A stretch of 50,254 bases of DNA from Girardia tigrina (lineage: Eukaryota). Position 1 is the first letter of the stretch. Every line of letters begins with the position of its first letter. The stretch covers positions 1-50,254 of the forward strand of contig MQRK01250496.1 of the NCBI GenBank assembly GCA_001938485.1. Reading direction: 5' to 3'. Below the pieces are notes generated by a model that worked only from the letters and a program-made list of their open reading frames with translations, did no database searches and was not told the DNA's origin. The position numbers were made by a program, and so were the translations under genes. Positions 6,665 through 46,309 of the stretch are shown here, piece by piece.

Positions 6665-7836
6665 ACGATTTTTGATTCATAAGTTTTTAGCCTATTTTTA
6701 TTACTTTTATCAAAGAATTTCTAAAGGAACTATAAAATATTAATCGGTGAAGTATTCGCCTATACAATCAATTATTTTTTGCCATCTTTCCGCTAATTTT
6801 CTAATTCCATCTCTGAAAATTTTTTTCTGGTTTTGATGCCATGAATTCAGCGATGCAATTTCGCACATCACTTTCTTGTTTGAATCGCTTACCAGCCAGA
6901 GTATGTTGTAGAGAGCGAAACAAATGAAAATCGGATGGAGCAATGTTCGGAGAATAAACCGGATGCGGTAAAACATCCCATCCCAGTTCCAAAATTTTAT
7001 TTTTCGTCGCTTTCGCAACATGAGGTGTAGCGTTATCGTGGAGTAGGATGATTTTTTTCATCGAATGTCCATTTTGCGGCCGCAATTCTTTGATTTTTTC
7101 GCTCAGTTTCAACAAATGTCCACTGAGCCGTGATTGTTTCTCCGGGTTTAAGTAATTCATAATAGAGGACTCCCTTCATGTCCCACCATATGCAGAGCAA
7201 CAATTTCTTGCTATAAAGATTAGGTTTTGGCGTTGAAGTTGATGGTTGTAGATTTTCGTAATACACCCATTTTTCGTCCCCGGTGACAATTCTCCACAAA
7301 AATGATTTACGGCGGTGACGTGAAAGAAGTGAAACGCACAAATTTAGTCTTTGTGCAATATTTGCATGCGGAATACTGGTGCGGAACTCAATGTCCAACT
7401 TTCAAAACTTTTCCCATTGCCGTAAGTCTTCGTTGCACCGTTGATTGATTGATTTCGAGGATCTTAGTCATACCTCTTATCACCATGGTTGAATCCTCTT
7501 TAAGTAATGCATCCAATTCCGAATCTTCAGTTTCTTTAGGTCTTCTGCATCTCTGCTTGTCCTCTAGGTCGTACTCACCATTTCTGAACTTCTTGAACCA
7601 GTTCTTGACCGTGGCATATGAAACAGTATCAGCTCCATAGGCTTTCGTAATTTGATCCAATGTTTCGGTGGTGTTTTTTCCTAAATTAAACATGAAAAGC
7701 ATGCAATGTCGAAGATGAATTTTGTTCATTTTTGAACGTCTTAGAAAACACGAGCATTTATTTTTTAATCGATTAAATCATTTAGTTATATTTCTTTTAT
7801 AATAAATGAAGGGCTAAAACTTATGTATCAACCTAA
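6665..7836 (-). mobile_element. mariner (DD34D) transposon, frameshifted transposase
   Basis: ORFs 7388-7729, 7033-7398, 6801-7160 and 6740-7021 give the HTH, GDEKW, HDNA, YSPNIAPSDFHLF and GIRKLAERWQK. TIR TTAGGTTGATACATAAG at 7836; degenerate partner at ~6670. Confidence 0.95.
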
Positions 7837-10590: not shown

Positions 10591-11024
10591 CAGTGGGGCG
10601 GTTTTAATTACATAATCCTGAAAGTTCATATATTATAACATTTTGCTGGTCAATGTGTTGTAAAAATGATTAAGGTGATGTGTCTACTTACAGTATACAT
10701 TAATCAAAGAATTCAATTGTAAAGGGTGCCAAAATGACGTCATAATTCTATTTTTAGTTTTTTTCTAAGAATTCCAAGAATCGCCAATATGATGATATAC
10801 AGCGTGCGCAGATAGTGACTGGCTATCCACAAAGCCCAAACACAAGTGGAAATTGTTACAAATGAGGGCTACTCCCAATCTGCAGTGTCCCATCTGCTAA
10901 ATCAATATCAACAGTCTGGCAGCATTGCAAATCAGACAATGATGGAAGCAGGTCGCCGCAGGAGATAATTTATTCGAAGAATTTATTCTTTTTTCTCACT
11001 ATGCAATTAAAACCGCCACCATTG
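10591..11024 (+). mobile_element. Tc1-type deletion derivative (MITE-like)
   Basis: TA|CAGTGGGGCGGTTTTAATT ... AATTAAAACCGCCACCATTG|TA, with an internal HTH remnant (EGYSQSAVSHLLNQYQQSGS). Confidence 0.75.
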
Positions 11025-11822
11025 TAGTTTGGGGATAAAAAATCCATTTTATTTCTATGTTTATCTAGATACATGTTTACAATAGATAACAAAGAATAAT
11101 GAATTACGTCTCTTAGTTGAATTGTTAAAATAATTAAAACAATATTTATTCTATAGATTAACAAGTTAATTTATTTTAAATTTAATTAAATTTTTAAATA
11201 TATTTGTATTAATTTCAAAACTGTCACTTGTTACATAAATAAATAAGACTTGCAAAAAAATCAAAATATATTTGATAATATTTGTATATTGAACTTGGTG
11301 ACCCGACAAAAGCGCCCACTAAAAAATGCGCCCCGACTAAAGCGCCATCATTATTTCTACTATTATTATATTGTTTAAATCCCAAATATTGAAGGACTTT
11401 TTGAATTTATATAAAAAAATGTAAAACTTATATTATTTGTGATTTAAACAATATAATGATAGTATAAATAATAGCGCCCAACGACTTGTAAAATTGAAAC
11501 AATAACAAAAGCAACAAAATGTTAAAAATAAAAGTAATAAAATGAAAAGAAAAAAGTAAAAAAATAACTCATTATATTATATTTCCAGATTATATGACAA
11601 TCGTTTTATATAATTTATTATATCATTTTGATTATAATTTTCTGTTTATGTTTTTATCCGTTTCTTTAGGCTTATTTGTTTGTTTTTTCTAAGCTTCTGG
11701 TCATCGAAATCAGGCTTGAAAACTTTCATATTCTATTTCCATTTGATTCTGTTCTTTTTTTAAAATGTTTCACTATTTTAAAAATTGAGGGATGGTTGCA
11801 CTCCACAGTTTGTTGAAAGGCA

Positions 11823-13243
11823 CTTTGTTTAATGCATCCATTGAAAAGTTAATTTTTCAATGCATGCAGAGATATAACAAATATTACTTTTCACTGTATG
11901 GACTACTTTGCATGGCATGGACTAACTTTTTGATGCTTTGACTTAAAATAAAGGGAAAACAATGAAAATTAAATGTATTTTACTATAAACACTATTATTT
12001 AATATAAAGAAACAATTTTGCAAGGAACAATTTAACTATATAATTATATAAATGTGCAATTTAACAATTATGACCATCAAATTCAGGCCCTAAATTAAAA
12101 ACGCAATTGTTGCAATTTTGAATGTTGAAGTGAAAATGTTTAATATTGCTTTTTTTTGTAGGAATGCATTTATTATTACCCTGAATTAAATCCGCAACTT
12201 TCAATTTCTGAGTCTCAGACGACTCTATATATTTCATTGCAGTAGCCTCAGATTTCCAATTGAAATGGGTACGCATTAAAGTTGTAGTCGCACCGGATTC
12301 TGCCATTGCACTTGCAGTCGACCTTCGAAAAGCATGTCCTGTATAACACTCTTTATTAGATAATCCCAAAAATTTTGCAATCTCCATTGGAATCTTGCTC
12401 AAAACATGTATTCCCATTGGTTGAGAAGTATAATAAGATGAACCATCTCTTTTAGTACGATAAGTTTTCCACAATCTAGTTTCAAAAATTTTCNNNNNNN
12501 NNNNNNNNNNNNNNNNNNNNNNNNNNNNNNNNNNNNNNNNNNNNNNNNNNNNAAATTTATTAGTCACAGCTGTAGCTTGTTTGCTGACAGTATACTTAAT
12601 CCAATAACCTGTAATTCCATCAAATTCTAGGTCATTGCAAAGAATTGAAACCAAATCGGCACACCTCAAGCCTCCGGAAAATGATATTACAGCAACTGCT
12701 TTCATTTGAAGAAAGTAATTCTCATTAGGAGCAGTCTCGAGAAATTTATTTATATCCAACAAACTAAAAATTTTGGGGTTTTTCTTTTATACCCAGCTTC
12801 ATACGATTTCAATTGCATAGTCAAACGAGGTAAAGTTTGAAGCTTCTTGCCATACATCATTTGGACCTTATAATTTAACATTGAATATTCTGACCATAAA
12901 GTACTAGAAGCAAACTGCTTCTCTTTACGTAAATAGTCAAAATATTGTATAAAGACATCCTCAATTAACGTTAACGGAACACTTCCAGTGTATTCGATAA
13001 ATTTATTCCAACAGCCTTCGTATCTCTTTGAGCTTTTAATAGGAACTAAATTGTCTAAAATATCCTTAGCAGATCTTTTCATTTTAATCAATTAATCAAT
13101 ATAATTTTAATACATATAGTACTATATAATTTTAGTACATCAAAAGTACTTTATTTACAAAATTACTATATTTACAAATGCATTAAACAAAATTACATTC
13201 ACTCATTTAAAAAGTACTTTTCAAATTTCGTGAAAATAATCAT
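11823..13243 (-). mobile_element. Crypton (CryptonI-like) tyrosine-recombinase transposon nested in the MULE
   Basis: Splits the MULE motif VEGW|AFQQ. No true TIR or TSD. Encodes a tyrosine recombinase. Confidence 0.8.
12061..13091 (-). pseudogene. Tyrosine recombinase (Crypton YR), one frameshift near 12765 and an N-gap
   Basis: N-terminal LVPIKSSKRYE…SSTLWSEYSML. Catalytic residues GLRCADL (R), GHAFRR (HxxR), HFNW and MKYIE (Y). Confidence 0.85.
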
Positions 13244-14687
13244 TGCCAACCTTCAACTGAATTATTTGTACGCAGCAAATCACTATTAACTCTACCAAAC
13301 ATATTCGAATCGTTTAAGGGAAACATTGGTACTACTCTACGGTTGCGTCTCATTCTTCCAATATAATTATTATCAAAATAATTAGGGAAATAGTCACAAT
13401 ATTCAAGAACTTCTATTAAAGTGGATGGAAAAGTTCTTGATGGAGAACAAATTGTCCATTTTTTGTACCATGTTGTAGCTTCGATTTGTAATTTTTTTAT
13501 ATTGTATTGTGCACCACATTTTTTTAAGTGTTCACATAATGTCGTTTTATCTAATTTTATAATGTTTCTAATTAAAATATTTTTCTTGTTAAAAAATTTT
13601 TTTGACTCTCAAAATTAATTCATTTAAAAATTAGTTCAGTTAAGAATTTATACAATAATTTAAAAGTGGCGGATTTTGTCACGGCGCTTTTGTCGGATGT
13701 CCTTTCTGTCGTGGGGGAGCTTTTGTCGGGGCGTACCATTGAACTTACATGATCTTAACTTAGTCCACATAAAGTAAATAAAAATCAATTTCAACTCGTT
13801 ATAAACTGTTTTCGTTATAATTTTGTTATTCTTAATTGTGTCGGTAATAACTTTTATTAAAAATGTCATTTTTTCAATACAGAATAAATCAATTTTTAAA
13901 ACAGGACTTATAACAAATCAGAGTTTATTGTTGAAATTTTGTTTCACAAACAACAGATTCTAAATTTACAAAATTGAATGTACTGTTCAATAAATTTTAA
14001 GAACTTTTTACTAAGTGCTTTAAACATCTGTTGAACATTCTGTGTCTGTGGATAAATCATTAATTTTACAAATCTAATCATTTTTTAACTATAATCATTT
14101 TTGAACTTTTTATCATAAAAAATACAAATTAGTTTAAAATATGGTCTGTGTGCCAACTATGAGACAATTATTAGTTATATTTAGACTACTTTTTGAGATT
14201 CATTGATTTAATCCAAGGATTAAATGAAAAGCAGAACTATGGTGTCACTCTAAGCGTTTATTTAAAATGTACCACCGTTAAATTTTCAATTCGTTCGATG
14301 CGAAATAAAAATAGTATCAAAATTTGAGCTCTTTATCTCAAACTATTGTCGAAATATTTAAAAAGTCTATTTCTTCGATTTAATTGCTAAATTGAAATCT
14401 AATAATCGTTGATATTTTCCAATATTTATGAGTAAAACGTATGAAAAAATTGTTATAATTCTCAGAACGAAAGCAGATTTTTAAAAAAAAATCAATGAAA
14501 CATTATTTTTGATTATATTCCATCACCAAATTTCGCCAGTCATAATTAATTACGCCTATTGAGAATTGTGGTGACCACTTTTAATTAAATAAAAAAATCT
14601 AATAAGAAAAAATCATTATTAACATAAAAATACTAATATTATTATTTATATGAAAATCACATATTTTACCTATCTATAAAGAAAAGG

Positions 14688-14819
14688 AAATTAACTATTC
14701 TTATGTAAATAGTTAATAAAACAACACTGAAATAACAATTGTTTAATTAATCAAATTAACTATTCTTATGTAAATAGTTAATAAAACAACACTGAAATAA
14801 CAATTGTTTAATTAATCAA
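14688..14819. repeat. Two perfect tandem copies of a 65-bp unit
   Basis: AAATTAACTATTCTTATGTAAATAGTTAATAAAACAACACTG… at 14688 and 14753. Confidence 0.9.
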
Positions 14820-15718: not shown

Positions 15719-17221
15719 ATATATATATATAATATTTATCTAGAAAATGTGTTTGTTTATCGGTCACGCTTTTCAAAGTTAAATTGCGGACGAACCAGAG
15801 TGAATCCATTTAAGGCCGTGGTCAATCTGGATAGCCCGCATCTATACAATTTTGTCGGTGCAGCGCCTTCGCCAAAAGACGCCCGGAAGCCGATGAAATC
15901 GATCGAAAACTGTACAAGTTGTTAAAAGGGTAAATTAACACCTATTAAGAACACCAACATGGGTTTTCAAACATTTATTTTCATTACAATCAGAATTGTC
16001 TTTTGGACAACTCTCAGCAAAACTCTCGTCATTCGACATCGTTCTAAATTGATAATTTTTTTATTAATGTTTGTTAATAAACNNNNNNNNNNNNNNNNNN
16101 NNNNNNNNNNNNNNNNNNNNNNNNNNNNNNNNNNNNNNNNNNNNNNNNNNNNNNNNNNNNNNNNNNNNNNNNNNNNNNNNNNNNNNNNNNNNNNNNNNNN
16201 NNNNNNNNNNNNNNNNNNNNNNNNNNNNNNNNNNNNNNNNNNNNNNNNNNNNNNNNNNNNNNNNNNNNNNCATCTAAAATATCAATTTTCCATCTGGGTG
16301 GGAGAAACACATTTCAAAATACTAAACTCAACATACAAAATTCAACAAACCAATTTCAACATACCAAATTTAAAATATTCCTCACAACACCAATTTCGAA
16401 TAATGCCGATTTTGATGATTTCTACAACGAATTTCGTGAAACTTTTCATGAAAATACTAATAAAATAGTAATTTGTTTGATAAATGACAATTTTTATCAC
16501 TTATTTTCTTATTATATTGCTGAAAATCAATTTTGTAGAAAATACAAATTGTCGTTATTAAAAAATAATATCAACAAATAAAATGCATAATTGCGGAGGA
16601 ACTGGTGTTAATCCACTTAATTAAGGATTTAATCTGGATAGCCCGCATCAATACAATTCGGTCAGCGCCATGCCTTTGCCGAAAGACGCCCGGAAGCCGA
16701 TGAAATCGATCGAAAACCGTAAAAGTCGTTAAAAGGGTAAATTAACACCGATTTCGAATTATGACGATCCCTACACGGAATTTCGTTAAAAATTTTATGA
16801 AAGTACTAATAAAATACTAATTTATTCGACGAATGGCGATTTCTATCACTTATTTACTAATTATATTGCTGAAAATCAATTTAGGTTAAATTTGCAAAAT
16901 TTCGTTATCATCTGATTCACGGTTTGTCGGCCAAGTTCAAATTTGAATATCATCTGATACAGTGTGACATAGTGAAGGAACAGTGAGTGAATTCACGTAA
17001 AGTTGAGATAGCTCTGCATAGTCCGCATCGAGACGGTTCTGTCTGTACAGCGCCTTTACCGAAAGGCTCCGGGAGTCGATTTATCTGACTGACTGTTAAA
17101 TCAACACAGAATTCAAAATAATTAATAATACATCATAATAATTACGATTTAAAAATTAAAACAGAAACTTTCAAAATCGAAAATTCAGCTTTCTCGTCAT
17201 ATATGACGGGTCTTTTTCTAG
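15719..17221 (+). mobile_element. Non-autonomous Helitron with internal direct repeats
   Basis: 3' hairpin CTCGTCAT-AT-ATGACGGG (17193-17210), then CTAG|T at 17218-17222. TA-rich 5' end. Repeats at 15820-15942 and 16630-16750, with a degenerate third copy at ~17010-17100. Confidence 0.7.
15943..16386 (-). mobile_element. Solo LTR (same family as 1863-2368), 5-bp TSD ACACC
   Basis: ACACC|TATTAAGAA ... TTCCTCACA|ACACC. The empty site is preserved in the Helitron repeat at 16741 (ATTAACACCGATTTCG). Confidence 0.85.
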
Positions 17222-22500: not shown

Positions 22501-25500
22501 TAATAATGGTAACCACGTTATTCGCAATTCAATCGACATTTTAACTCAATAACAAATAAAATACAAATTTAAATAACGAAGTTATTAGACATTTAATCCA
22601 AATAATTCAGAAATAATTTGAAGGCAAATTTTATCAACTTTTTCTATTTTGTTTGGGTTAAAAATATTAGTATTAGTAAACATTTCAATAATGACATTTG
22701 ATCTCGTTATTTTATGAGAAATCTAACTTCTCCGGTCCCGCATTCCTCCCAGTTTTTCTCATTGATCGTTTCGTGTCTTGAGATTTTCCAGTATCTCCCT
22801 TATCAACGCATTATCTTTGTAATTTCTGTAAAAGATGTTGATATATTCCAATTTTAAATAAAATCTCAAATTATTAATTTTTATTTCATGGAATTCCAAA
22901 TACAATTCTCCTTTGTTTTTTAAGTTTTACACATGTTTATAAATGTTATGTGATGTTATAGGTTTACGTTGTCTAAAAATATAACAAAAATTTAAAAAAA
23001 ATTGATGATCAATGACATTCATATTTTTTTTCAAAAAAACATGAGACAAATGTTAAATTTACTAATTTATATCGAAGAAAGTACAAATTTAAAATTTGTT
23101 TAAATGTATCAATTTCAATTTATGACCATTAAAATTGTACTGCCTCCGTTCGGAAATATGGTTTACAGTTTAGCGATTTTCGTCAGGAAATATTGTATAC
23201 ATTTGCGAAAAAATAAAATAAATGAAAAAATGTACATGACAAGTATATTATATTAACTTTATTTGAAACATTTTAAATAAGAATGATTTTTTTAACTCGA
23301 AAATTGATTTGACATTTTTGTACGCTTTTTTGGAACATACATATTTTTCTGACAGTCCACCTTCGTGACGAAGTTTTTCTTTACTTAAATGAGGTATTTT
23401 ATAACAATTTCCTCCACCTGTTAACATAATTAACTCGATACATGCTTGCAATGTTGTAAAAACGTTATCGAGAGTATTTGCTTCTAATTGATGAAATGCA
23501 TCTTGAACACAATTTATTAATTCATCAATTGTGTTGGGCGAAGCTTCATGTTGCAGCGATTGTATGGAGTTGAAAAAACCTAAATCGAGAACATTTAAAT
23601 CGGGGCTATTTGCCGGTTGCGCCTTAAATTTAGTATTCCAGTCAGTAGAACCAAGATCGACAATATCTGCATCAATAAATGGGGATACGCATTGTCTTGT
23701 TGTACGTAAATTGTTTTCTTTTTGTACGCTGGCAGAAATTTAGATTTAATTGCGGGAATTACATTTTCCATGATCATATTTTTGCAATGTACTGCTGTAA
23801 CAGATTCCCCATTTTTTGTTATTATTGTCCCTTTAGCCCCTTTTTTTAGAATTTCTTTGAGCTGGTTCTTGGTAAACAATTGGCCATATTCCAGTTTTTC
23901 CATCAAAATAATGCTTTCGATGTGCATCATAACGTGGTCGAGCTACTGCAGCCATGAACATTACTTTCGTAATAAATCTTTTACTTTTGCAGTTTCTCTC
24001 CGGTTCTTCTAAGTTTAACAATTAGTAATAAGAGCGCTTAACTTTAGTTAGATAAAATCACTTTCTATCAATGTGAACGTAATCGTACAAATCATAAAAA
24101 AGCAAATCTCCATTAATAGTAAGACTTTAGACAAGCAAAACTCCAATCTGTCCATTTTATTTTTATCTGTTAAAGTTGGTTTAACTGTAGAAGATATTCT
24201 CTTGTTATATTTTCCCGACTTGAATATATCAAACAAAGTTGATTTTGGAATACCAATTGCGAAGGAAAGACTGCGTAGCGTTCCTCGCCAATTTAATGGT
24301 GTATTTATTTGCGCTAAATTGTTTGAATAGTCTTTAAGTTTTCTTCCGCATCTTTCTTTTTTGAAGAAACATCGGCACATATTTTACCTTCTCTGTATTG
24401 AGTTTGTGCTGCATGCCAAATTCTATTAACGGTTAGCCGGGAAACTCGAAACGCAGTAGCAACTTCATTGTTATTAGTGTTTTAGCATATTCTCCTTCAT
24501 CTGCTGTTATAATTTTTCTTGACGTTGTTCTTTGGTTAATTCTTTATATTTGGAATCCCTTCTTTCTAAGTTTAACAAATTTCCTTCAGAATTTTCCATA
24601 CTAGTCTTGCAGCGGTATTTATTTTATTTCTAAAGAAACACTGATGTTTGAGCGTAAAGTTTTTAATTAAGAATGATATTGCTTACGTCAAATATTTCAG
24701 GTTATATTGTCATGAGTATTTACTATAACAATATATTGACAGTTGCCAATTTATTTTTATAATCACGATAATGTATGATTTCTGTTGAAATGTATGCCAT
24801 ATTTCCGGACGGAGGGAGTATTATTTATTTATAAAGATGACATCTTTATTGAATTTTGTTAATCTTATTGTTTCCTGTAAACGTTTAAAATGAATCAATA
24901 AAGTAAAGGAAATAAGAGCGATATGAATCATCGGTGTTGTTATCAGAATTAGTTGACAAATGGTACCTGTTTCACAGTGTTAAAAATGGCAAGGCATGTA
25001 TAACTTGATCAATTTATTTAGAAGTGGTAGTGGCAACTGGACCACGTTATATGATATCTAATGGCTTGATTTCCTCTAATGCGTTTACTTGTGATACTCT
25101 TTCCTCCTACCAACATCGGTTGTTGACACCACAATTTTTTATAAAGCCTTTTATTGAGGCGACACTTTCAATGTACTGAAGCACTACAAAAATGATATAT
25201 TAAAAAATTTTCTTATAAAGATGGGGATCCTCAAATTTCTCCACATCTCTTAATGTATACTGATGTCTTGTTGGAAAGTTACAAAACCAAAATTTAGTTA
25301 TATTTTTACTACCAATTTAACTAGGTATGTGAATTTTGTAATTTTGTTATCCTAGTTTTTCGGAATAAACTGCTTTTCTTTTCGGTTTTTCGTATATTTA
25401 TAATTTATCATTCCATTTTGAGCTAAAAAATTGAAATTAATATAATACAGAGATTATATAAACATTACATTCACATTACCTTAAAGAAAAGTAATTAAAA

Positions 25501-28500
25501 AATATTTTTTACTGAAAACAAAGATTGGTTCTGCTATCAATAATATTCTTTAGTTTGCTTAAAAAATCCCTGCTCCATAGAATGCTCTGTCAAATGCTAT
25601 CTATTTTCTTATCCAGTTGTCAAATCTCTAAGTATTTAAAGTAAAATTAAATTCGATTGTCAATAAAATATTTTATTAATTAACAAAATATTCTTATTTT
25701 ATAAAATATTTAGAAAGATTATAAGAAAATCAAGACGATTACATATTTAACCTTTTCCAGCCCAAATTATTATTTAAGCAAAATATTGGAGCATTTAATA
25801 TCCGTTACAATGTTGATTTAAATTGCTAAGAAACAAGTGAGAATCGCGCTTTTTTGCATTCTAATATATGCAGTGTCATCTATTAGACTTTTTAGAAACT
25901 ATTACTATGTGTACAATTTAAATTTGGTAAAAGAGATCTGTAATTTAATTTTTCAAATATGTTGCAAATGGCAACAATGGAATGGAAAGAGTTAAAAAAT
26001 TATCATACAATCAGCTAAAATACCAAAATATCAAAAATTGTAAACCTAATATTTTAATCTTATAATTAGGATAAAAACATGCTCTCTTTAATTTGTTCTT
26101 TGTATATCAAGATGAGCGTTATCTATACATAAAATGATTGATTAGATTTATCTAATAGTGCCCGTTATCTTTTATATTTACAATTTTTTTAGGAAGTGAT
26201 CATTTTTGTTTGTCATATATATCATTTATCACCAGATATTACCCGATTTGGTTTTACGGTCTATATATATATATTTCAGTTCTCTAAATAATTTGTCATT
26301 TAGCTTTCTTTAGGTCATGTATATTCTTCCATAATTCACTGAATCCATAAACTGAAATTTAAATGTATATTTATTGAAAGGATATGAAAATTAAATGAAA
26401 TATTTAAAGAAGTAAAATAATTCAATAACAAAATTTACTTAACACATTGACTGCTGTTGACATCATGCACCGAACGTCTGCTACGCGTTGGAAAATATGA
26501 TCGAACATTGTTGCCTTTTTAGCATTTAACACATTGAATGCTGAGTACGAGATATCTCGTACTTAGCGTCTTAGTAATGTAAGCCAAAGTACGAGATATC
26601 TCGTACTCAGCATTCAATGTGTTAACGACAAAAAGAATTTTTTTAAAATATACTAAATGGATTATCTGTTATTTCTGAAGATTTTATCAGAATCTAATCA
26701 CCTTACTGTCGGCCAAGATTGAAATTATTGCCACTATTGAATATAACACATCAATACACTCAAACCTTTTTTGTACAATTTTATAAGGGATTTATGAAAG
26801 AGAGTTCAAGTATCTAAGAATTCAAATAACTTCTAATTAAAAAAAAAGATATCAGATTTACTATCTTTAATTCTGCTTACTTGGCTGCAAAACTTGTTTA
26901 GTTTAGTACTTATAAAAAAGTCTTAAGAATAAATTAATTATTCCTACTAACACATTTTTTCGGTATCGCTGTTACAAAATCTCTATTACTCCTTCGAACA
27001 AAAGAAAAAAATTCCAATCTTTTTCAATCCTACAGTTCAATTAATTTAACACTTGGTACGGAACTTAACCCTTAGTCTTCTTTTAATAGTGTTTAGATGT
27101 ATTCTTCGTTTTACCTTTTGAATTTGTACATCTCGATCTGTAACAATTTGAAACCATGTGTCTTTTCCACGTCATAATTTTTGCCTTCAGGCTTTCGTAC
27201 TTAAATTTTTTTTGAGTAATGTAATCTTATTTTTCTCGCAGCTTCTCTTTAAGGCGCACTATTGTGGTCTTTGACAAACCAGTAATTTCAACCAAGGGAC
27301 GCTGACTGGCATATATGTGTTTCTTGATTTAATCTAAGAGTTTAATCTTGTTAAATAGCTTCAAATACCGCCGCTTCATTAAATCGCGATCCTTAATTTT
27401 TTAAAAAATTGAATAAATTAAGTGATTTCAGGATAGAGACAAACCTCACATAGTTAAGAATTTCTCACCTTTTTGATATTTTTTAAAAAATATTTTCCAA
27501 CAAAACCTTAAAAATATTCAAACTTTTGACGTAAAATGACGTAGTTAATTTAAGAACAAAGAAAATTTTAATATTTAAATTTAAGAAGTAAGATTTTTTA
27601 TAAATTTTTTTATTTACATTTTTTTTACTATGAATTAATTTCCGTTAATGACGAAAAATTTCTTTTCATATGGCGATAATATTTTATTAAGATTATAATA
27701 ACCGCCATTAGATATCAGGCTTGCTTTTAAGGTGTTGCTGGAATAAAGGGGGCAAGTGAACCATATCGATATGGATTGGATTGACAATGACTGTGTGAAT
27801 AGAGGGGTTGTCATGTATCAGATAATATTTGGTGAGTGGAAAGAGGTGGACGAGTTCGGAGAAAAATTCTTGGTATTTATCTCTATTCAGACCACCGTAA
27901 AATGTGCCAATCCTCTTGTAGAGATGGCCCTGATGAGGGATATATTTTTCACCAAGCTGTTTGTACTGGGGTATAGATCCGAGTATTCATTTTTGATCAG
28001 CCGTTAGTGCGTAAAGTCAATTGATTGAAACCCATTTCATCAATTTAAAAGCACGATTTTGTACTCCACGCTTCATGAAGATGCCTCAGTAATTCTGCAG
28101 ATCGTAATTCTTTTACTCGGTCACTGTTTCTTTGATCAACAACATGCCTCAATTCTTTAACGGTGAATAATTTTCAGGATTAGAATCTGCTTATTAAGGG
28201 TAGGGAACATCCAATACTCGTATTTTCTTTCAGAAAGGTTTTCATTTATGATAATGGTGGCTCAAGGAAGTCCTCCAGGTAATCGAGTAACTTCACTCAA
28301 GAACTTTCAGTTATCATAATGGGCTGATTAACTCCACGTGTTCCTACACTGATCTCCTTGATTTACCGATATTTGTATATAATGTTGTTAACGGTCTCTT
28401 GGTGGATCCCTAATTGAGAACTCAGCAGATAATAATCTTGTTCATTCAGGCTTGATGTAACAAGCAGGATTTTGTTGGCTTTGGCGATCCTACCGTATTT

Positions 28501-31500
28501 TTCCGTGTATAAGATCCGCCCTTATTTTTAGGTGTGCATTTTTGGAAAAGTTTTTTTAATGAAAAATTAAAAAATATTAAATAAACTTTATTATAAAAAC
28601 CATAAAATTCTTCCTCACTATCACCTGAGTTATTAACCAATTCTAACCTTTCTGTCATAACAGCAGGATCTTTTTCATTAGAGGAGTGACTTTCATAAAT
28701 AGTATCATCCTCAGTACCATCCAATGCATTGGATATTCCACACTTTTTAAAAGATTTAATGACAACTTCTTCCTTGACACCATGAATTGATAACCCAAGT
28801 ACAAACCTCACTAATGGTAGGTTTTCGTACTTTGCCTGTGGGGTCACATTGGAGTCTACTTCATGCATCCATTTGTTCCAATATTCTCTCATCAGATTAT
28901 TGAATGGGTTATTAATAGAAACATCAAGAGGTTGAAGCTGGCTTGTTAAGCCTTCTGGAAGGACAGCCAATTGGGTTTCAGTATTTGTTGCTAACTTTTT
29001 AGTTTCTTCTGTGTGGTGAACTCTGAACTGGTCAAATACAAGCAAATTAGGCTTCTTGGAAAGAGCTCCAGTTCTTGTTTGTCAAATCGCAATCGTTGAG
29101 CATCGACACGTTTTGCGGATGGTAGTGCAGAAGATCAAGTTTCACAAGCAGGCAGTGGTAGGTCTTTCGGAGTAGGTCAAAAGCAGCTGCCCCACGAGAC
29201 ACAGACGTTGAAGGATCTGTAGCTACAAAATTTTGAACTTCTTCGAGCCGTTTAGGCGTTGTAGATGTAGATTGACGCCCTTACCGGATGAGATCTTCAA
29301 TGCTTTCAGTCTGCTGAAAACGCTCAAACAATACCTTGATCGTCGTAAACTTAAGAGGTGAGGTAGCAAAATAAAAATACCACTGTATTCGTACCTCTTC
29401 ATAATTCTGGAAATATGCGTAGAGGAGTACCATTTTAATTCTCTCCTAAAGAGGACGCCGTATTGACATTTCATTCATCTGTAAATAAATAATAATAGTC
29501 AGTGTTAAAACGTAAATATGAATTTCCGCGAAATAAAATGGCTTTCTGGAGATAGATTAAAACAAACATCCTCCAATTACTTTTGGATAACCCTATATAT
29601 ATATTTTCACTTATTCAATTTAATAATGTCCTTATAATTTGTAAACAGGTATATTAAAGTCAATAACTTTTGAACCCTTTATGACTTTTAAGGTGAAATT
29701 ACAAATGCTTATCTAAAATCTTCGTTCAACAATTTGAGCAAATATTGATTCTTTTTTTTCAATGTGGTTTAAAACAGTCTTATTCGATTTGATATCAAAG
29801 TACTTGGTTAAGAGCACAAAAATAATGTAGTTAATTTAAATTAAACATAATAATACATAATGAATTTATATAACTGAAGAGCTTTGTCTATTTATAATAA
29901 GTCAGTATATTAAAATTTTAATTGTTAGGATTTGGGTGTTTTAAAGGTCTAAACTAGGGAGTAATTTAGACCAATTTTTTTATGGACTCTCAAGCTCTAA
30001 AAAATTTATAGACAGCAAAATGGGCTTTTCTCCCCCTTTCAAGAGGATAAACTGATTGCTTGAATCAAGGGGATAGGTTGTAGAACTTGTTTTCAATCAG
30101 ACGCTGTTTTCGGGTATTCGATTGAATAATGCTGCTTTCGCTTCAAAAGAAGTATAATCATTATTTAACATTTATTATTCCAGTAGTATTTTTCGTAAAC
30201 ATAAATTATTACTGTTTCAGATGCTGCTTATTGGTAGGCTAATTAAGATATTTAACGAGTATTGTGCAATTTTATCTCCAACTACCAAAAATTTTTCTAT
30301 GTTCCCAATTTGGAACGTTGGTATGATGTTCTTAAAACATAAGTAAAGTGTCGCCACTGATACAATATCTATATAAATGTAAATGTTGTAGATGATGTGT
30401 ATTTGACCATCAAAAATATATTGTGTCATTAGTTTTTATTTTAATGCAAACAGAAACATACTACGCATGTATTATGTGTATTGTAAGTTTCAAAGCATGC
30501 ATCATGCAAACGCTTGTCACATTTACGACGACAGTTAGCTATCATATCTAACGTTATTTGGTGTAGGAGCTGTAGATCCAACAGCAGTACGTTTTGCAGA
30601 TAACTTGAATAAGGTAAGAAGAATGTCAAATCTGAACTGGATATGGGAGAGCGCTTCTCTCGAAGGATTTACAGATTCCACCACCATTTTATACCTTTTA
30701 TTTTGTCTTGCGCTTATACTGGAATCAGTATACAAATCTCGTTATCCATGTCATTATAATTGGTACTTTCATCGTCACTAGACCAACTTTCGGTATCGGT
30801 ATGTAAAACCTCAAATGTTTATGCTGCATTGAATAATAATAGTTTTTAATAATAATACACAATTGTATAAACTAATAATATTAAACTAATACGTAAATAA
30901 TTCAGTAAACTTAAAATTTTGCTTCAGTGAATGCTTAATCATTACATTATGAGCAGTTATTTATATTATATTATATTTTTATACTTATATACTTATTCGT
31001 TAGTGTTAGGTATATTGTAAGTAGGGATGGACCGATTTTATTTTTTGAAATCCTGCCGGTGCTGGAGTCAGACTCAGAATGTTTGTCCGACCGGAGTTGG
31101 AGCCGTTATCTGTTTTCAAATAATTGAAAAAACGCAAATTATATACAATAAGATATACGATATATTATTAGGGTAAAACACAAAATCGATAAGCTAAAAA
31201 GACGTTTCTTTCTAAATTATTATATTATAATAATCAATTAAGCAAATGCGAATAAAATTTTTTTAAAGGATGAGGTTTTTTGCACTTTCTATAAGTTGGG
31301 ATCGATGATCAGTGACAATGTCTCCAGTTGTACTGAAGACTTTCTGATGAATCGCTTGTAGAAGGTGTTATCGAAGTATGATAAATTATACTCCTTTTTA
31401 TTCAATGAAAGAGACGAAAAGGTTTTTCATACCGTTAATGGGTGTATTTAATTATGACGGTTTAGGGATACAGATGCGTAAAAAATGCATTATTATTAAT

Positions 31501-43330: not shown

Positions 43331-45005
43331 CGTGGTGCGCTCAATAAGTAGAACATTGTTGAAAGGATTATTGTATAAACCCGTGTCAGTACTCTTTCGA
43401 AATACTTCAGTTTCATAGTCCTTCGATTTTCTTTCAATTAATACATCCAAAAATGAAATCTTGTCCCCTGATTCGATTTCACTGGTAAATNNNNNNNNNN
43501 NNNNNNNNNNNNNNNNNNNNNNNNNNNNNNNNNNNNNNTGGTTTTTATTTTCAAAAATCAAGAAGATATCATCAACATATCTAGTATAAAATAAAGGCAT
43601 GTTTCCTTCAAAAAAATTGAATTTTTTCTCCAAACTTTGAAGAAATATTGACGCCATTAAAGGTGCTAATGGAGACCCCATTGCCACTCCATCAACCTGC
43701 ATGTACCATTCAACTAATGTACCATTCAACTAACATAGTGAGCCTAACATAAGAGTAATAATCCGATTCCAATGAAATTTATTTTTCATAACAAGCAAGT
43801 TTTAAAGGTATCATTTCTCAAAGAAATCTCCATTCACACCAAAACATTTTTTCCAGCGCACAACAAGTTCCAGAAAGACTTTTTCGAAGAATTTCGGTGG
43901 CTGTGGAGCCAAGAAATTTGAGACTTCATCTTTCAAATCTTCTTTCGTAGCAAAATGTTGACCCCTGAGAGCTCTCTTGAGGTGGTTGAAGAGATGATAA
44001 TCGGATGGCGCCAGATCCGAACTGTATGGACGATGTGAGAGTAGGGTGAGGCCACAACCCACAATTGATGACATTGACAGCCCACTTGTGTGGATGGGTG
44101 CATTGTAGTACAAATAATATAACTCATAAACTCTGCTCTTCCTTCTCAGCTTTCTGGCCTGTAGCACGAGCCGGGAGTAGTATTCACTGTTGGTACGAAC
44201 ACCAGCTTCCGCAAATTCGGCAAGGATCATTCCATTTGCATCCCAAAAAGTGGTGAGCATGAGAGCTTTTTTTTGAGAGGTTGATGTTCGCATCTTTTTC
44301 GAACACCCTTCACCTGGCAGCTTCCACTCTTGAGACTCACGTCTTGATTCTGGAACATAAAGGGCAAGTGGTGTTTCATCCATTGTCCTAATATTCTGTA
44401 AAAAGCGGTTTCCAATACGTTCAGAGGTTTAAGTTTTCCTGGCAGCACATCAATCGCTGATCCTTCATGTGTGCTGTTAAAAACCGTTGCACGAGGCGTG
44501 AACACAATTTTCTAATTCCAGTTTCCGCAAGCAGGGATTGTATGGTACCTGTGCTGACATTTAATCGCATTCTTTGCTGGTGATTCGTCGCTCACACCGC
44601 ACGATTTTCTTGAGTCTTTTCGCTATTTCTTCACCAATTTCACGTGGTCTACCTGACTTTTCTTCATCAAAAACAGACATTCGACCATCTCGAAAATGGT
44701 TGAACCTTCGTTTGACAGTAGATATGGATGGACTCTCTTCGCCATAAACAGAACTTAGCTGCACGAATATTTCTTCCTGGATTTTCCCTTTCATTAACAA
44801 GAAACGAATAACGCTTCAATATTGGACGTTTTCCAATGGCATTTTCGAATTTATGCGCTCTCTAACCTAAACACAAATAATGTATTAAAACGAATATCAC
44901 AAATATTACCTTTGCTTTAAATATAAATATTGCTTTTATGAAAAAAATCATTGGAATCAGAATATTAGTTCTATGTTAGGCTCACTACTTATTGAGCGCA
45001 CCACG
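43331..45005 (-). mobile_element. mariner (DD34D), near full length, frameshifted
   Basis: TA|CGTGGTGCGCTCAATAAGTAG…TGAGCCTAACATA, with the matching TIR ending at 45005|TA. ORFs 44561-44800 (HTH) and 43811-44383 (MDET, FWD, YSSDLAPSDYHLF). Confidence 0.93.
43352..43735 (-). mobile_element. Penelope-like reverse-transcriptase fragment inserted in the mariner TIR
   Basis: QVDGVAMGSPLAPLMASIF, RYVDDIF, FLDVLI and VFRKSTDTG. Confidence 0.9.
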
Positions 45006-45866: not shown

Positions 45867-46309
45867 TGTGAGGAATATTTGGTGTGTGGATGTTTTTGTG
45901 TAGTTTTTGTATGTTCAAATGTTTTATGTTGATTTGGGATTGTGCCTCTCCTAACCAGATGGATTATCAATATTTAATTTTTATNNNNNNNNNNNNNNNN
46001 NNNNNNNNNNNNNNNNNNNNNNNNNNNNNNNNNNNNNNNNNNNNNNNNNNNNNNNNNNNNNNNNNNNNNNNNNNNNNNNNNNNNNNNNNNNNNNNNNNNA
46101 TGACTATAAAAATATTTTATTTCAGCCAATAAAATTTAAAGTAAATATTTTTAAATAAAATAATTTTCTCAAGTTAGTTCAGATTATAATGGGAGATATT
46201 GAAAATTGATTGATGGATTCTAGTGAAAGCCATAATATTGATCATCATAAAGATGATAAAAATTGTGAATATAATAAATGTTCTGTCAAATGTGTGAGTT
46301 CTCTTAACA
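45867..46309 (+). mobile_element. Solo LTR, TG...CA ends, 5-bp TSD ACAGC
   Basis: ACAGC|TGTGAGGAATATT … CTCTTAACA|ACAGC. Confidence 0.8.

What the first reader, a model, noticed from the sequence alone, without database searches (positions are those of the whole stretch)
11823..13243. Near-intact CryptonI-like tyrosine-recombinase transposon with mappable ends inside a MULE transposase
Seen: a ~1.4-kb intronless insert encoding a tyrosine recombinase with all catalytic motifs (R, HxxR, H/W, Y) and only one visible frameshift. It separates the MULE residues LRTNNSVEGW and AFQQTV, so both junctions can be placed within a few bp. Known: Cryptons transpose with a tyrosine recombinase and lack TIRs and TSDs; the LP.KS..Y / SSTLWS.YSML N-terminus matches the insect-described CryptonI group. 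Inference: this is a recently active Crypton lineage in a probable flatworm, possibly horizontally acquired. The nesting gives a rare view of its target site.
Basis: partly seen in the sequence, partly recalled or inferred. Interest (0 to 1): 0.8.

Follow-up and report, generated by a model that had tools for sequence, protein, structure and literature searches.

The report
Small tyrosine-recombinase transposon nested in transposon remnant
A 1.4-kb mobile DNA element that carries only a Cre/Xer-like recombinase gene, broken by one frameshift, sits inside the remains of another transposon; it is a tidy example of a known kind of element (Crypton-type), not a new kind.

Summary
On the minus strand, about 11827-13244, lies a 1418-bp insert with one intronless gene (12061-13082) for a 340-residue tyrosine recombinase. 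It has one frameshift and no other break outside the unread part. The N run (12494-12552) lies inside the gene. Its flanks are collinear and in one frame, and its 20 codons match the spacing in 12 of 13 relatives. R, K, H, R, W and Y all lie outside the gap and are kept in 55-57 of 57 full-length relatives.

The insert splits a MULE-type remnant exactly: uninterrupted relatives have two residues between EGW and AFQ, and the window has two once the insert is set aside. The trinucleotide CAA stands at both junctions. Three other loci with unrelated flanks share the 5' end. No other copy confirms the 3' end.

The host is not a MULE gene. It is a 2441-bp non-autonomous element with inverted ends, a 9-bp target duplication, and MULE- and hAT-derived remnants.

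By structure this is a Crypton-class element: recombinase only, no reverse transcriptase. CryptonI membership, a flatworm host and horizontal transfer could not be tested.

The parts
11288..11296 (.). Left copy of the 9-bp direct repeat ATTGAACTT (target-site duplication of the host element)
   Evidence: exact copies at 11288-11296 and 13738-13746, each abutting the outer edge of an inverted end.
11297..13737 (-). Host: non-autonomous element with inverted ends, 2441 bp including the insert and about 1.02 kb without it. It carries MULE- and hAT-derived coding remnants and no DDE domain.
   Evidence: the two ends align as imperfect inverted repeats; the motif CGACAAAAGC occurs twice at each end in inverted orientation. 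Pfam finds no MULE domain in the remnants; homology of the remnants.
11297..11352 (+). Left inverted end of the host element
13676..13737 (-). Right inverted end of the host element
13738..13746 (.). Right copy of the 9-bp direct repeat ATTGAACTT
13246..13437 (-). MULE-transposase remnant upstream of the insert, ending ...LRTNNSVEGW
   Evidence: 186 library proteins at E<=0.001 match this stretch; 10 of the 150 listed were scanned; 9 of those 10 carry PF10551 MULE above Pfam's cut-off.
13381..13467 (-). hAT-like remnant fused in frame upstream of the MULE-like stretch
   Evidence: 79% identity to P0024 over 29 residues. P0024 carries Dimer_Tnp_hAT.
11729..11824 (-). MULE-transposase remnant downstream of the insert (SAFQQTVECNHPSIFKIVKHFKK...)
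   Evidence: matches the stretch that follows EGW-x-x in uninterrupted relatives. The closest is P0017.
11825..11827 (-). CAA at the 3' junction. It is one of two copies: one belongs to the host codon (Q), the other to the element or to a duplication.
   Evidence: read directly; the two-residue spacing requires exactly one such codon in the host.
13243..13245 (-). CAA at the 5' junction (second copy)
   Evidence: the AA is shared by all four copies that reach this end; the C is not.
11827..13244 (-). The recombinase-only element, 1418 bp with the N run counted as 59. Its bounds can slide by up to 3 bp within the CAA repeat.
   Evidence: 5' end: (window, L002, L006 and L007 share it from AATGATT..., with unrelated flanks). 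3' end: (host reading frame and spacing only).
12061..13082 (-). Tyrosine-recombinase gene, intronless, 340 codons in the intact relative. Broken by one frameshift; 20 codons unread in the N run.
12494..12552 (.). Assembly gap (59 N) inside the recombinase gene. Flanks are collinear and in frame, and the length fits the relatives.
13083..13244 (-). 5' non-coding terminal region. It holds a 22-nt palindrome (13205-13226) built on GAAAAGTAC and a conserved GTTTAATGCAT site.
11827..12060 (-). 3' non-coding terminal region. It holds a 36-nt palindrome (11833-11868) and about 19-nt subterminal direct repeats (11879-11922) carrying the same GAAAAGT-type motif.
13178..13190 (+). 13-nt perfect inverted repeat partner of the 3' tip (11825-11837)
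   Evidence: this 5'-region copy is kept in L001, L006 and L007.

Best explanation
This is one copy of a compact DNA transposon of the Crypton class. It is 1418 bp long and carries a single intronless gene for a two-domain, Cre/Xer-like tyrosine recombinase. It inserted into the coding remnant of a non-autonomous MULE-type element and has since acquired one frameshift.

Shown:
- the gene and its R-K-H-R-W-Y residues;
- purifying selection on the family;
- a 5' end shared by copies at unrelated loci;
- an exact interruption of the host reading frame, with CAA at both junctions;
- a GAAAAGT-type motif repeated in both non-coding ends across subfamilies.

Inferred, by analogy with the Goodwin model quoted in PMC3212892 and PMC13465315: the recombinase binds the repeated end motifs and brings the two ends together. 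It releases the element as a circle whose junction reads ...TTAAAC/AATGATT.... It then re-enters DNA by strand exchange at a target that shares 2-3 nt (here CAA) with that junction. On this model the flanking repeat is microhomology and not a true duplication.
For: Gene and protein:
- 14 relatives, the best 88% identical over the query.
- the pieces are 98, 99 and 95% identical to the intact 340-aa P0001.
- 13 of 13 relatives match Pfam Phage_integrase and 9 of 13 match the N-terminal SAM-like domain.
- the only solved-structure hits are Cre (best E 0.01), over profile positions 93-294.
- the window's GGLRCADL motif aligns, via P0004, with the first catalytic Arg of XerD.
- catalytic columns are kept in 55-57 of 57 relatives.
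- dN/dS is 0.12 between the intact subfamilies L001 and L002.

Mobility:
- window, L002, L006 and L007 share the 5' end from the same base, and their upstream flanks differ.
- L005 (49% protein identity) keeps the terminal motif.
- the other copies' flanks are not MULE.

Insertion site:
- of 150 MULE relatives, 30 match both host pieces. 25 of those 30 have exactly two residues between W and A, including all 12 whose downstream match has E<=0.01. P0017 reads EGW-HR-AFQ.

Nothing but a recombinase:
- no other open frame of 80 codons or more in L001, L005 or L006; the few extra ones in L002 and L004 overlap the recombinase gene or are short, and were not scanned.
- 10 of the larger open frames (of about 80 listed) in four distant loci were scanned; none has a reverse-transcriptase domain.

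End motif:
- 21 GAAAAGT sites outside the reading frames against 4 inside, over 9 sequences. Shuffled sequences give about 0.3 per sequence.
Against: - The 3' end is seen in the window alone. L001, L002 and L003 stop short of it. L007 departs from the window about 15 nt before the junction.
- No second copy lies in the 50-kb window.
- No named Crypton came back from any search, so the class assignment rests on architecture, not on phylogeny.
- Single pieces of the window protein fall just below Pfam's cut-off (26.4 against 27.1 bits).
- Twenty codons are unread.
- A circle, recombinase binding to the motif, and the crossover position are all inferred.
- Kojima and Jurka report no terminal repeats in animal Cryptons, whereas here CAA flanks the insert; with one copy this may be chance.
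Confidence: 0.8

Rival explanations
1. The recombinase gene is cargo captured by the host MULE-type element (a Pack-MULE-like acquisition) and not an independent insertion.
For: It lies wholly inside an element with inverted ends and a 9-bp duplication. That element's interior is already a patchwork of hAT- and MULE-derived pieces.
Against: The same 5' end occurs at three other loci with unrelated, non-MULE flanks. Uninterrupted MULE relatives close the site with exactly two residues. The insert's non-coding ends carry their own conserved motifs.
Confidence: 0.04
2. It is a leftover recombinase gene of a DIRS/Ngaro-type retrotransposon.
For: Those elements also encode tyrosine recombinases. 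The relationship of Crypton groups to them is unresolved (PMC3212892, section 5).
Against: The unit is 1.4 kb with one gene. Close copies hold no reverse-transcriptase, RNase H or methyltransferase frame; the few extra open frames there were not scanned. In four distant loci, the 10 larger frames scanned (of about 80 listed) showed none either. The 85 relatives carry only PF00589 and PF13495 in precomputed Pfam. That search sees only proteins of 0.55-1.75 times the query length, so fusions would be missed.
Confidence: 0.06
3. It is a bacterial or phage integrase, present through contamination or recent transfer from a prokaryote.
For: The best named matches are prokaryotic families: Pfam Phage_integrase, weak XerA/XerD, PHROG integrases and Cre.
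Against: It is nested in AT-rich eukaryotic transposon remnants. NCBIfam scores are 29-47 bits against cut-offs of 220 or more. tblastn finds no match in 50,697 phage or 72,556 plasmid records. Pattern scans find no relative in prokaryotic genomes or viral contigs; these scans are pattern-limited. Distant relatives sit in an animal genome beside CCDC32.
Confidence: 0.03
4. It is a domesticated host gene and not a transposon.
For: There is strong purifying selection between subfamilies.
Against: Copies occur at different loci. Several are broken: the window, L003, L006 and L007. The non-coding ends are conserved. This copy sits inside another transposon.
Confidence: 0.03

Closest known systems
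Animal Cryptons (CryptonI / CryptonA groups of Kojima and Jurka 2011, PMC3212892)
   Same: A DNA element whose only gene is a tyrosine recombinase. There is no C-terminal extra domain and no long terminal repeats. Non-coding ends of a few hundred bp are kept between copies.
   Different: No sequence comparison with a named Crypton was possible. The DUF3504 signature tied to CryptonA-like recombinases is absent (0 of 13). CAA flanks this copy, while the paper found no terminal repeats in animal Cryptons (passage). Lengths and termini of described CryptonI elements are in that paper's Additional file 1, which I could not see.
Fungal and oomycete Cryptons (CryptonF/S) and the Goodwin integration model
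   Same: Short identical sequence at both junctions, read as microhomology between element and target (passages in PMC3212892, and PMC13465315).
   Different: There the repeats are 4-6 bp and the proteins carry extra domains (GCR1_C, a conserved C-terminus). Here the repeat is 3 bp at most and the protein is recombinase only.
Cre / XerD-type prokaryotic recombinases
   Same: Similar size (340 aa) and a two-domain layout: an N-terminal SAM-like domain plus the catalytic domain. The residues are R-K-H-R-W-Y. The spacings R to K 28, H to W 26 and W to Y 9 equal those I recall for Cre; the Cre numbering is recalled and not from a call.
   Different: Only remote similarity (E 0.01 to Cre with a family profile). 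NCBIfam scores are far below cut-offs. The setting is eukaryotic and multicopy.
DIRS / Ngaro / PAT tyrosine-recombinase retrotransposons
   Same: They use a tyrosine recombinase for integration.
   Different: They carry reverse transcriptase and characteristic split or inverted repeats. None is present here.
MULE (Mutator-like) non-autonomous elements (the host)
   Same: A 9-bp target duplication (the usual MULE size is recalled knowledge), inverted ends, and a remnant of the transposase region downstream of the MULE domain.
   Different: There is no DDE/MULE domain left. The interior also holds a hAT-derived piece.

Membership tests
Crypton class (recombinase-only DNA transposons) | Encodes a tyrosine recombinase with the catalytic R..H..R..Y set | tested here: met
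   all six catalytic positions are present in the window copy and kept in 55-57 of 57 relatives.
Crypton class (recombinase-only DNA transposons) | No reverse transcriptase or other retroelement gene in the unit | tested here: met
   The 1418-bp unit has one gene. L001, L005 and L006 have no other open frame of 80 codons or more; the few extra ones in L002 and L004 were not scanned; none among the 10 larger frames scanned (of about 80 listed) in four distant loci.
Crypton class (recombinase-only DNA transposons) | No long terminal repeats; at most short direct repeats or microhomology at the ends | tested here: met
   only CAA is repeated at the junctions. There are palindromes and a 13-nt offset inverted repeat inside the ends. 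Both junctions are seen in one copy only.
Crypton class (recombinase-only DNA transposons) | Copies at different loci share both ends | tested here: inconclusive
   The 5' end is shared by 4 of the 6 sequences aligned; L001 begins inside it and L003's contig is too short. The 3' end is confirmed by 0 of 4 relatives.
Crypton class (recombinase-only DNA transposons) | Moves through a circular intermediate | not testable with these tools
   No read data were at hand. None of the fetched contigs carries a 3'-end/5'-end junction.
CryptonI group | Recombinase clusters with the insect CryptonI sequences in a phylogeny | not testable with these tools
   No named Crypton sequence came back.
CryptonI group | No extra protein domain after the recombinase | tested here: met
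   only PF00589 and PF13495, and the PF00589 match runs to residue 290 of 340; median length of relatives is 339 aa.
CryptonA / DUF3504-related recombinases | Similarity to Pfam DUF3504 | tested here: not met
   0 of 13 relatives match at E<=1; none of the three window pieces matches.
DIRS / Ngaro retrotransposons | Reverse transcriptase / RNase H (and methyltransferase) beside the recombinase, with split or inverted long repeats | tested here: not met
Prokaryotic Xer / integron / phage integrase families | Score above the curated family cut-off, or close relatives in prokaryotic or phage DNA | tested here: not met
   29-47 bits against cut-offs of 220-330; no relatives found.
MULE (host element) | Homology to MULE transposases | tested here: met
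   This covers the C-terminal remnant only.
MULE (host element) | Intact MULE/DDE domain (autonomous element) | tested here: not met
   no Pfam MULE match in the remnants. The element is about 1 kb without the insert.
MULE (host element) | Inverted ends flanked by a 9-11 bp target duplication | tested here: met

The most novel reading that the evidence does not exclude
The window copy belongs to a widespread but so far unnamed lineage of very compact (about 1.3-1.8 kb) Cre/Xer-like recombinase-only transposons of animals. The lineage is distinct from the DUF3504-related Cryptons. Its non-coding ends carry a conserved recombinase-site-like motif: inverted GAAAAGT half-sites at both ends. Its integration junction can be read to the base. 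That would make it a natural eukaryotic counterpart of a Cre/lox-type system, with defined sites.
Probability: 0.25. Interest if true: 0.6.

Novelty: new member of a known kind. Interest (0 to 1): 0.35.

Why it matters
Cryptons are rare, their ends are hard to define, and their integration mechanism is inferred from few cases. This copy interrupts a conserved coding motif of another transposon. The site can therefore be read to within 3 bp without any empty allele, and it shows a 2-3 nt identity between element and target. The family also has intact, selected copies and conserved end motifs, which gives a clear set of sequences for descriptive work on how such elements recognise their ends.

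Tried and rejected
- Second copy in the window: none by tblastn with the pieces apart.
- Pfam on the MULE pieces: nothing. Word search with the upstream MULE piece: nothing in its length range. This is why the one large protein search went to that piece.
- Solved structures with single window pieces: no match.
- Names or accessions for relatives: none for 16 clusters.
- Host taxon: Rfam and tRNA scans were empty. Other open frames in the window are only transposon remnants.
The 5'-end pattern found nothing in viral or prokaryotic contigs.
- Literature: one search was badly set (2 of 6 terms sufficed), and none of its 25 listed papers holds 'crypton'. (Crypton+flatworm, 4 papers; Crypton+Schmidtea, 7 papers, one listed) gave no report of a flatworm Crypton. 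I read passages of PMC3212892, PMC10167997 and PMC10862779. The remaining papers I saw as listings only.
- Rejected: reading the 36-nt palindrome near the 3' end as the crossover site. The 19 nt outside the 5' palindrome travel with the element in four loci.
- Rejected: a shared MULE target for the other copies.
Full report
**1. What is in the sequence**

The window is AT-rich, with 20-41% G+C per kb. It is full of transposon remnants: mariner, Tc1-like and pogo-like.

On the minus strand a reading frame for a tyrosine recombinase starts at the ATG at 13082 and ends at the TAA at 12061-12063. It is readable as three pieces, separated by one frameshift and by the N run at 12494-12552 (one search confirms 59 N).

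Pfam finds Phage_integrase in the two downstream pieces, at profile positions 8-58 and 110-170 of 172. Both hits fall just under the curated cut-off. The first piece has no hit.

**2. The gap, tested first**

Each piece was searched on its own against the 14 relatives found, and only coordinates were printed.
- 13 relatives align to both flanks of the N run. P0014 is too short.
- The flanks project to 20 intervening residues in 12 of the 13, and to 21 in P0010.
- The N run plus one flanking base is 20 codons in one frame.

The flanks are therefore collinear and in frame, and the stated length fits. I did not read the letters of close copies opposite the gap.

**3. State of the gene**

I compared the coding DNA with L001, which encodes the intact 340-residue P0001 (counts only).
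- There is one frameshifting indel and no other indel.
- There are 23 mismatches in 963 aligned columns.
- No in-frame stop occurs in the readable pieces.
- Twenty codons are unread.

The pieces are 98, 99 and 95% identical to P0001.

**4. What the protein is**

Family and domain evidence:
- All 13 closest relatives match Pfam Phage_integrase. Nine also match the N-terminal SAM-like domain PF13495. None matches DUF3504 at E<=1.
- A family profile finds only Cre among solved structures: best E 0.01, profile positions 93-294 against Cre 124-332.
- P0004 aligns with XerD so that the GGLRCADL motif, which the window shares, falls on XerD's GLRVSEL.
- NCBIfam and PHROGs give only weak Xer and integrase hits, far under cut-offs.

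In an alignment of the 57 full-length relatives, with the window pieces added as separate rows, the window's candidate catalytic residues are kept as follows:

| Residue | Relatives with the same residue |
|---|---|
| R | 57 of 57 |
| K | 57 of 57 |
| H | 56 of 57 |
| R | 55 of 57 |
| W | 55 of 57 |
| Y | 55 of 57 |

The spacings are R to K 28, H to W 26 and W to Y 9. These equal the spacings I recall for Cre; that numbering is recalled, not from a call.

dN/dS between the intact subfamily copies L001 and L002 is 0.12, with saturated dS. The protein is under selection.

**5. Relatives**

- The word search with the family alignment gave 85 proteins among 3304 candidates. Of these, 57 have 300 residues or more. 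Median length is 339 aa and median pairwise identity is 37%.
- All come from JGI, ENA or Logan assemblies, apart from three NCBI clusters. None carries a name or accession.
- 51 of the 57 sit on contigs of at most 2 kb. This fits a repeat of that size, but the collection's contigs are short anyway.
- Pattern scans found no relative in prokaryotic genomes or viral contigs. tblastn found none in the phage or plasmid collections.
- Four distant loci (28-40% identity) lie in an animal genome, beside CCDC32 and a P-element-like gene. The 10 larger of their roughly 80 listed open frames were scanned, and none has a reverse-transcriptase domain.

**6. The ends**

The metagenome scan matched 117 stretches and confirmed 12 loci. 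It returned L001 (97% DNA identity to the window) and four 72-75% relatives from the same sample.

5' end (element sense):
- The window, L002, L006 and L007 become alignable at the same base, AATGATTATTTTCACGAAATTTGAAAAG... This is window 13244 downward. Upstream of it they are unrelated.
- L001 begins 19 nt inside and carries 26 unrelated nt.
- L003's contig starts too close to the gene.
- L005 (49% protein identity) keeps the terminal motif.
- L004 shows no such motif in its 222 upstream nt.

3' end:
- L001 stops 84 nt after the stop codon.
- L002 and L003 stop inside a set of subterminal repeats.
- L007 follows the window into the 36-nt palindrome and then differs for its last 28 nt.

No relative confirms the 3' tip.

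**7. The host and the insertion site**

The upstream flank reads ...RRVVPMFPLNDSNMFGRVNSDLLRTNNSVEGW, then Q and a stop. The downstream flank reads (K)QSAFQQTVECNHPSIFKIVKHFKK....

- It found 186 proteins at E<=0.001, all matching its last 50-65 residues.
- I scanned 10 of the 150 listed. Nine have the MULE domain above cut-off, one has it below, and five also have FLYWCH above cut-off.

I then searched the two host pieces apart against the 150.
- 30 proteins match both pieces.
- 25 of the 30 have exactly two residues between the W of EGW and the A of AFQ. This includes all 12 whose downstream match has E<=0.01.
- One has one residue and one has three. Three are non-collinear chance matches (E>=4).
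- The closest relative, P0017, reads EGW-HR-AFQKTVECNHPSIFKIVEHFKK.

In the window the host supplies TGG CAA on one side and CAA AGT GCC on the other. With one CAA counted once, the host reads W-Q-S-A, which gives the two-residue spacing. The insert is then 1418 bp, with CAA at both junctions. The AA of the 5' CAA is shared by all four copies that reach this end; the C is not.

**8. The host is not a gene**

- Outside the remnants lie imperfect inverted ends, 11297-11352 and 13676-13737, each with two copies of a CGACAAAAGC motif.
- Directly outside these ends lies the 9-bp direct repeat ATTGAACTT.
- The interior holds only the C-terminal MULE remnant and, fused upstream of it, a stretch 79% identical to P0024, which carries the hAT dimerisation domain.

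The host is therefore a roughly 1-kb non-autonomous element of MULE type. The 9-bp duplication as the usual MULE size is recalled knowledge.

**9. Sites inside the ends**

- The 5' region has a 22-nt palindrome (13205-13226).
- The 3' region has a 36-nt palindrome (11833-11868) and about 19-nt direct repeats (11879-11922).
- All of these are built on GAAAAGT. Over nine sequences this 7-mer occurs 21 times outside the reading frames and 4 times inside. About 0.3 per sequence is expected.
- A 13-nt perfect inverted repeat links the 3' tip (11825-11837) to a site 55 nt inside the 5' end (13178-13190). The 5' copy is kept in L001, L006 and L007.

PMC3212892 (passage) describes typical recombinase sites as two inverted repeats of 11-13 bp around a 6-8 bp spacer. 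The palindromes here resemble that, but binding is inferred.

**10. Comparison with what is known**

From PMC3212892 I saw passages, the outline and abstract, and section 5 in full.
- Cryptons are DNA transposons that use a tyrosine recombinase.
- The fungal ones have 4-6 bp terminal direct repeats, taken as recombination substrates.
- CryptonI was found in insects only.
- Animal Cryptons were found in six phyla, and flatworms are not among them.

PMC13465315 (passages) describes the short repeats as microhomology with the target. PMC4157794 (passages) stresses how rare Cryptons are. PMC5753468 (passages) lists the Repbase groups A, F, I, S and V.

By architecture the window element fits the class. 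Group membership needs a phylogeny with named sequences, which these tools could not supply.

**11. Verdict**

The element is a new member of a known kind. The exact nesting and the conserved end motifs are its useful features.

Noticed in passing
window 13381-13467 (minus strand): A hAT-like coding remnant is fused in frame to the MULE-like remnant inside the host element. It is 79% identical over 29 residues to P0024, which carries Dimer_Tnp_hAT. The host's interior is therefore a chimera of two transposon superfamilies.
   Followed up: partly
L001:1-26 and L002:1-28: L001 lacks the first 19 nt of the shared 5' end. It begins with 26 nt that are the reverse complement of the start of L002's flank. 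This may be an assembly chimera or a shared neighbouring repeat.
   Followed up: no
window 13178-13190 and 11825-11837: A 13-nt perfect inverted repeat links the element's 3' tip to a conserved site 55 nt inside its 5' end. The 5' copy is kept in L001, L006 and L007.
   Followed up: partly
window 14688-14817: A 65-nt unit is present as two perfect tandem copies.
   Followed up: no
window 10597-10614 and 11000-11017: An 18-nt inverted repeat pair (94%) lies just upstream of the host element. It may mark a small MITE.
   Followed up: no
window 6801-7729, 24048-24380, 28446-29045, 43811-44383: Remnants of mariner (HTH_48, Transposase_1), a Tc1-like HTH, a pogo-like DDE_1 and a second mariner. The window is a patchwork of transposons with no recognisable host gene, tRNA or Rfam RNA.
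   Followed up: partly
relatives listed: 51 of 57 full-length recombinase relatives sit on contigs of at most 2 kb, about the size of the element itself. This could reflect repeat-collapsed assembly or merely the short contigs of the collection.
   Followed up: no
L005:144-290: A relative with only 49% protein identity keeps the 5' terminal motif (ATTATTTTCACGAAATT.GAAAAGT) and the GAGTGAATGTAATTTT box, with about 65 extra nt between them.
   Followed up: partly
window 16083-16270, 43491-43538, 45985-46099: Three further N runs lie in the window, outside the finding.
   Followed up: no
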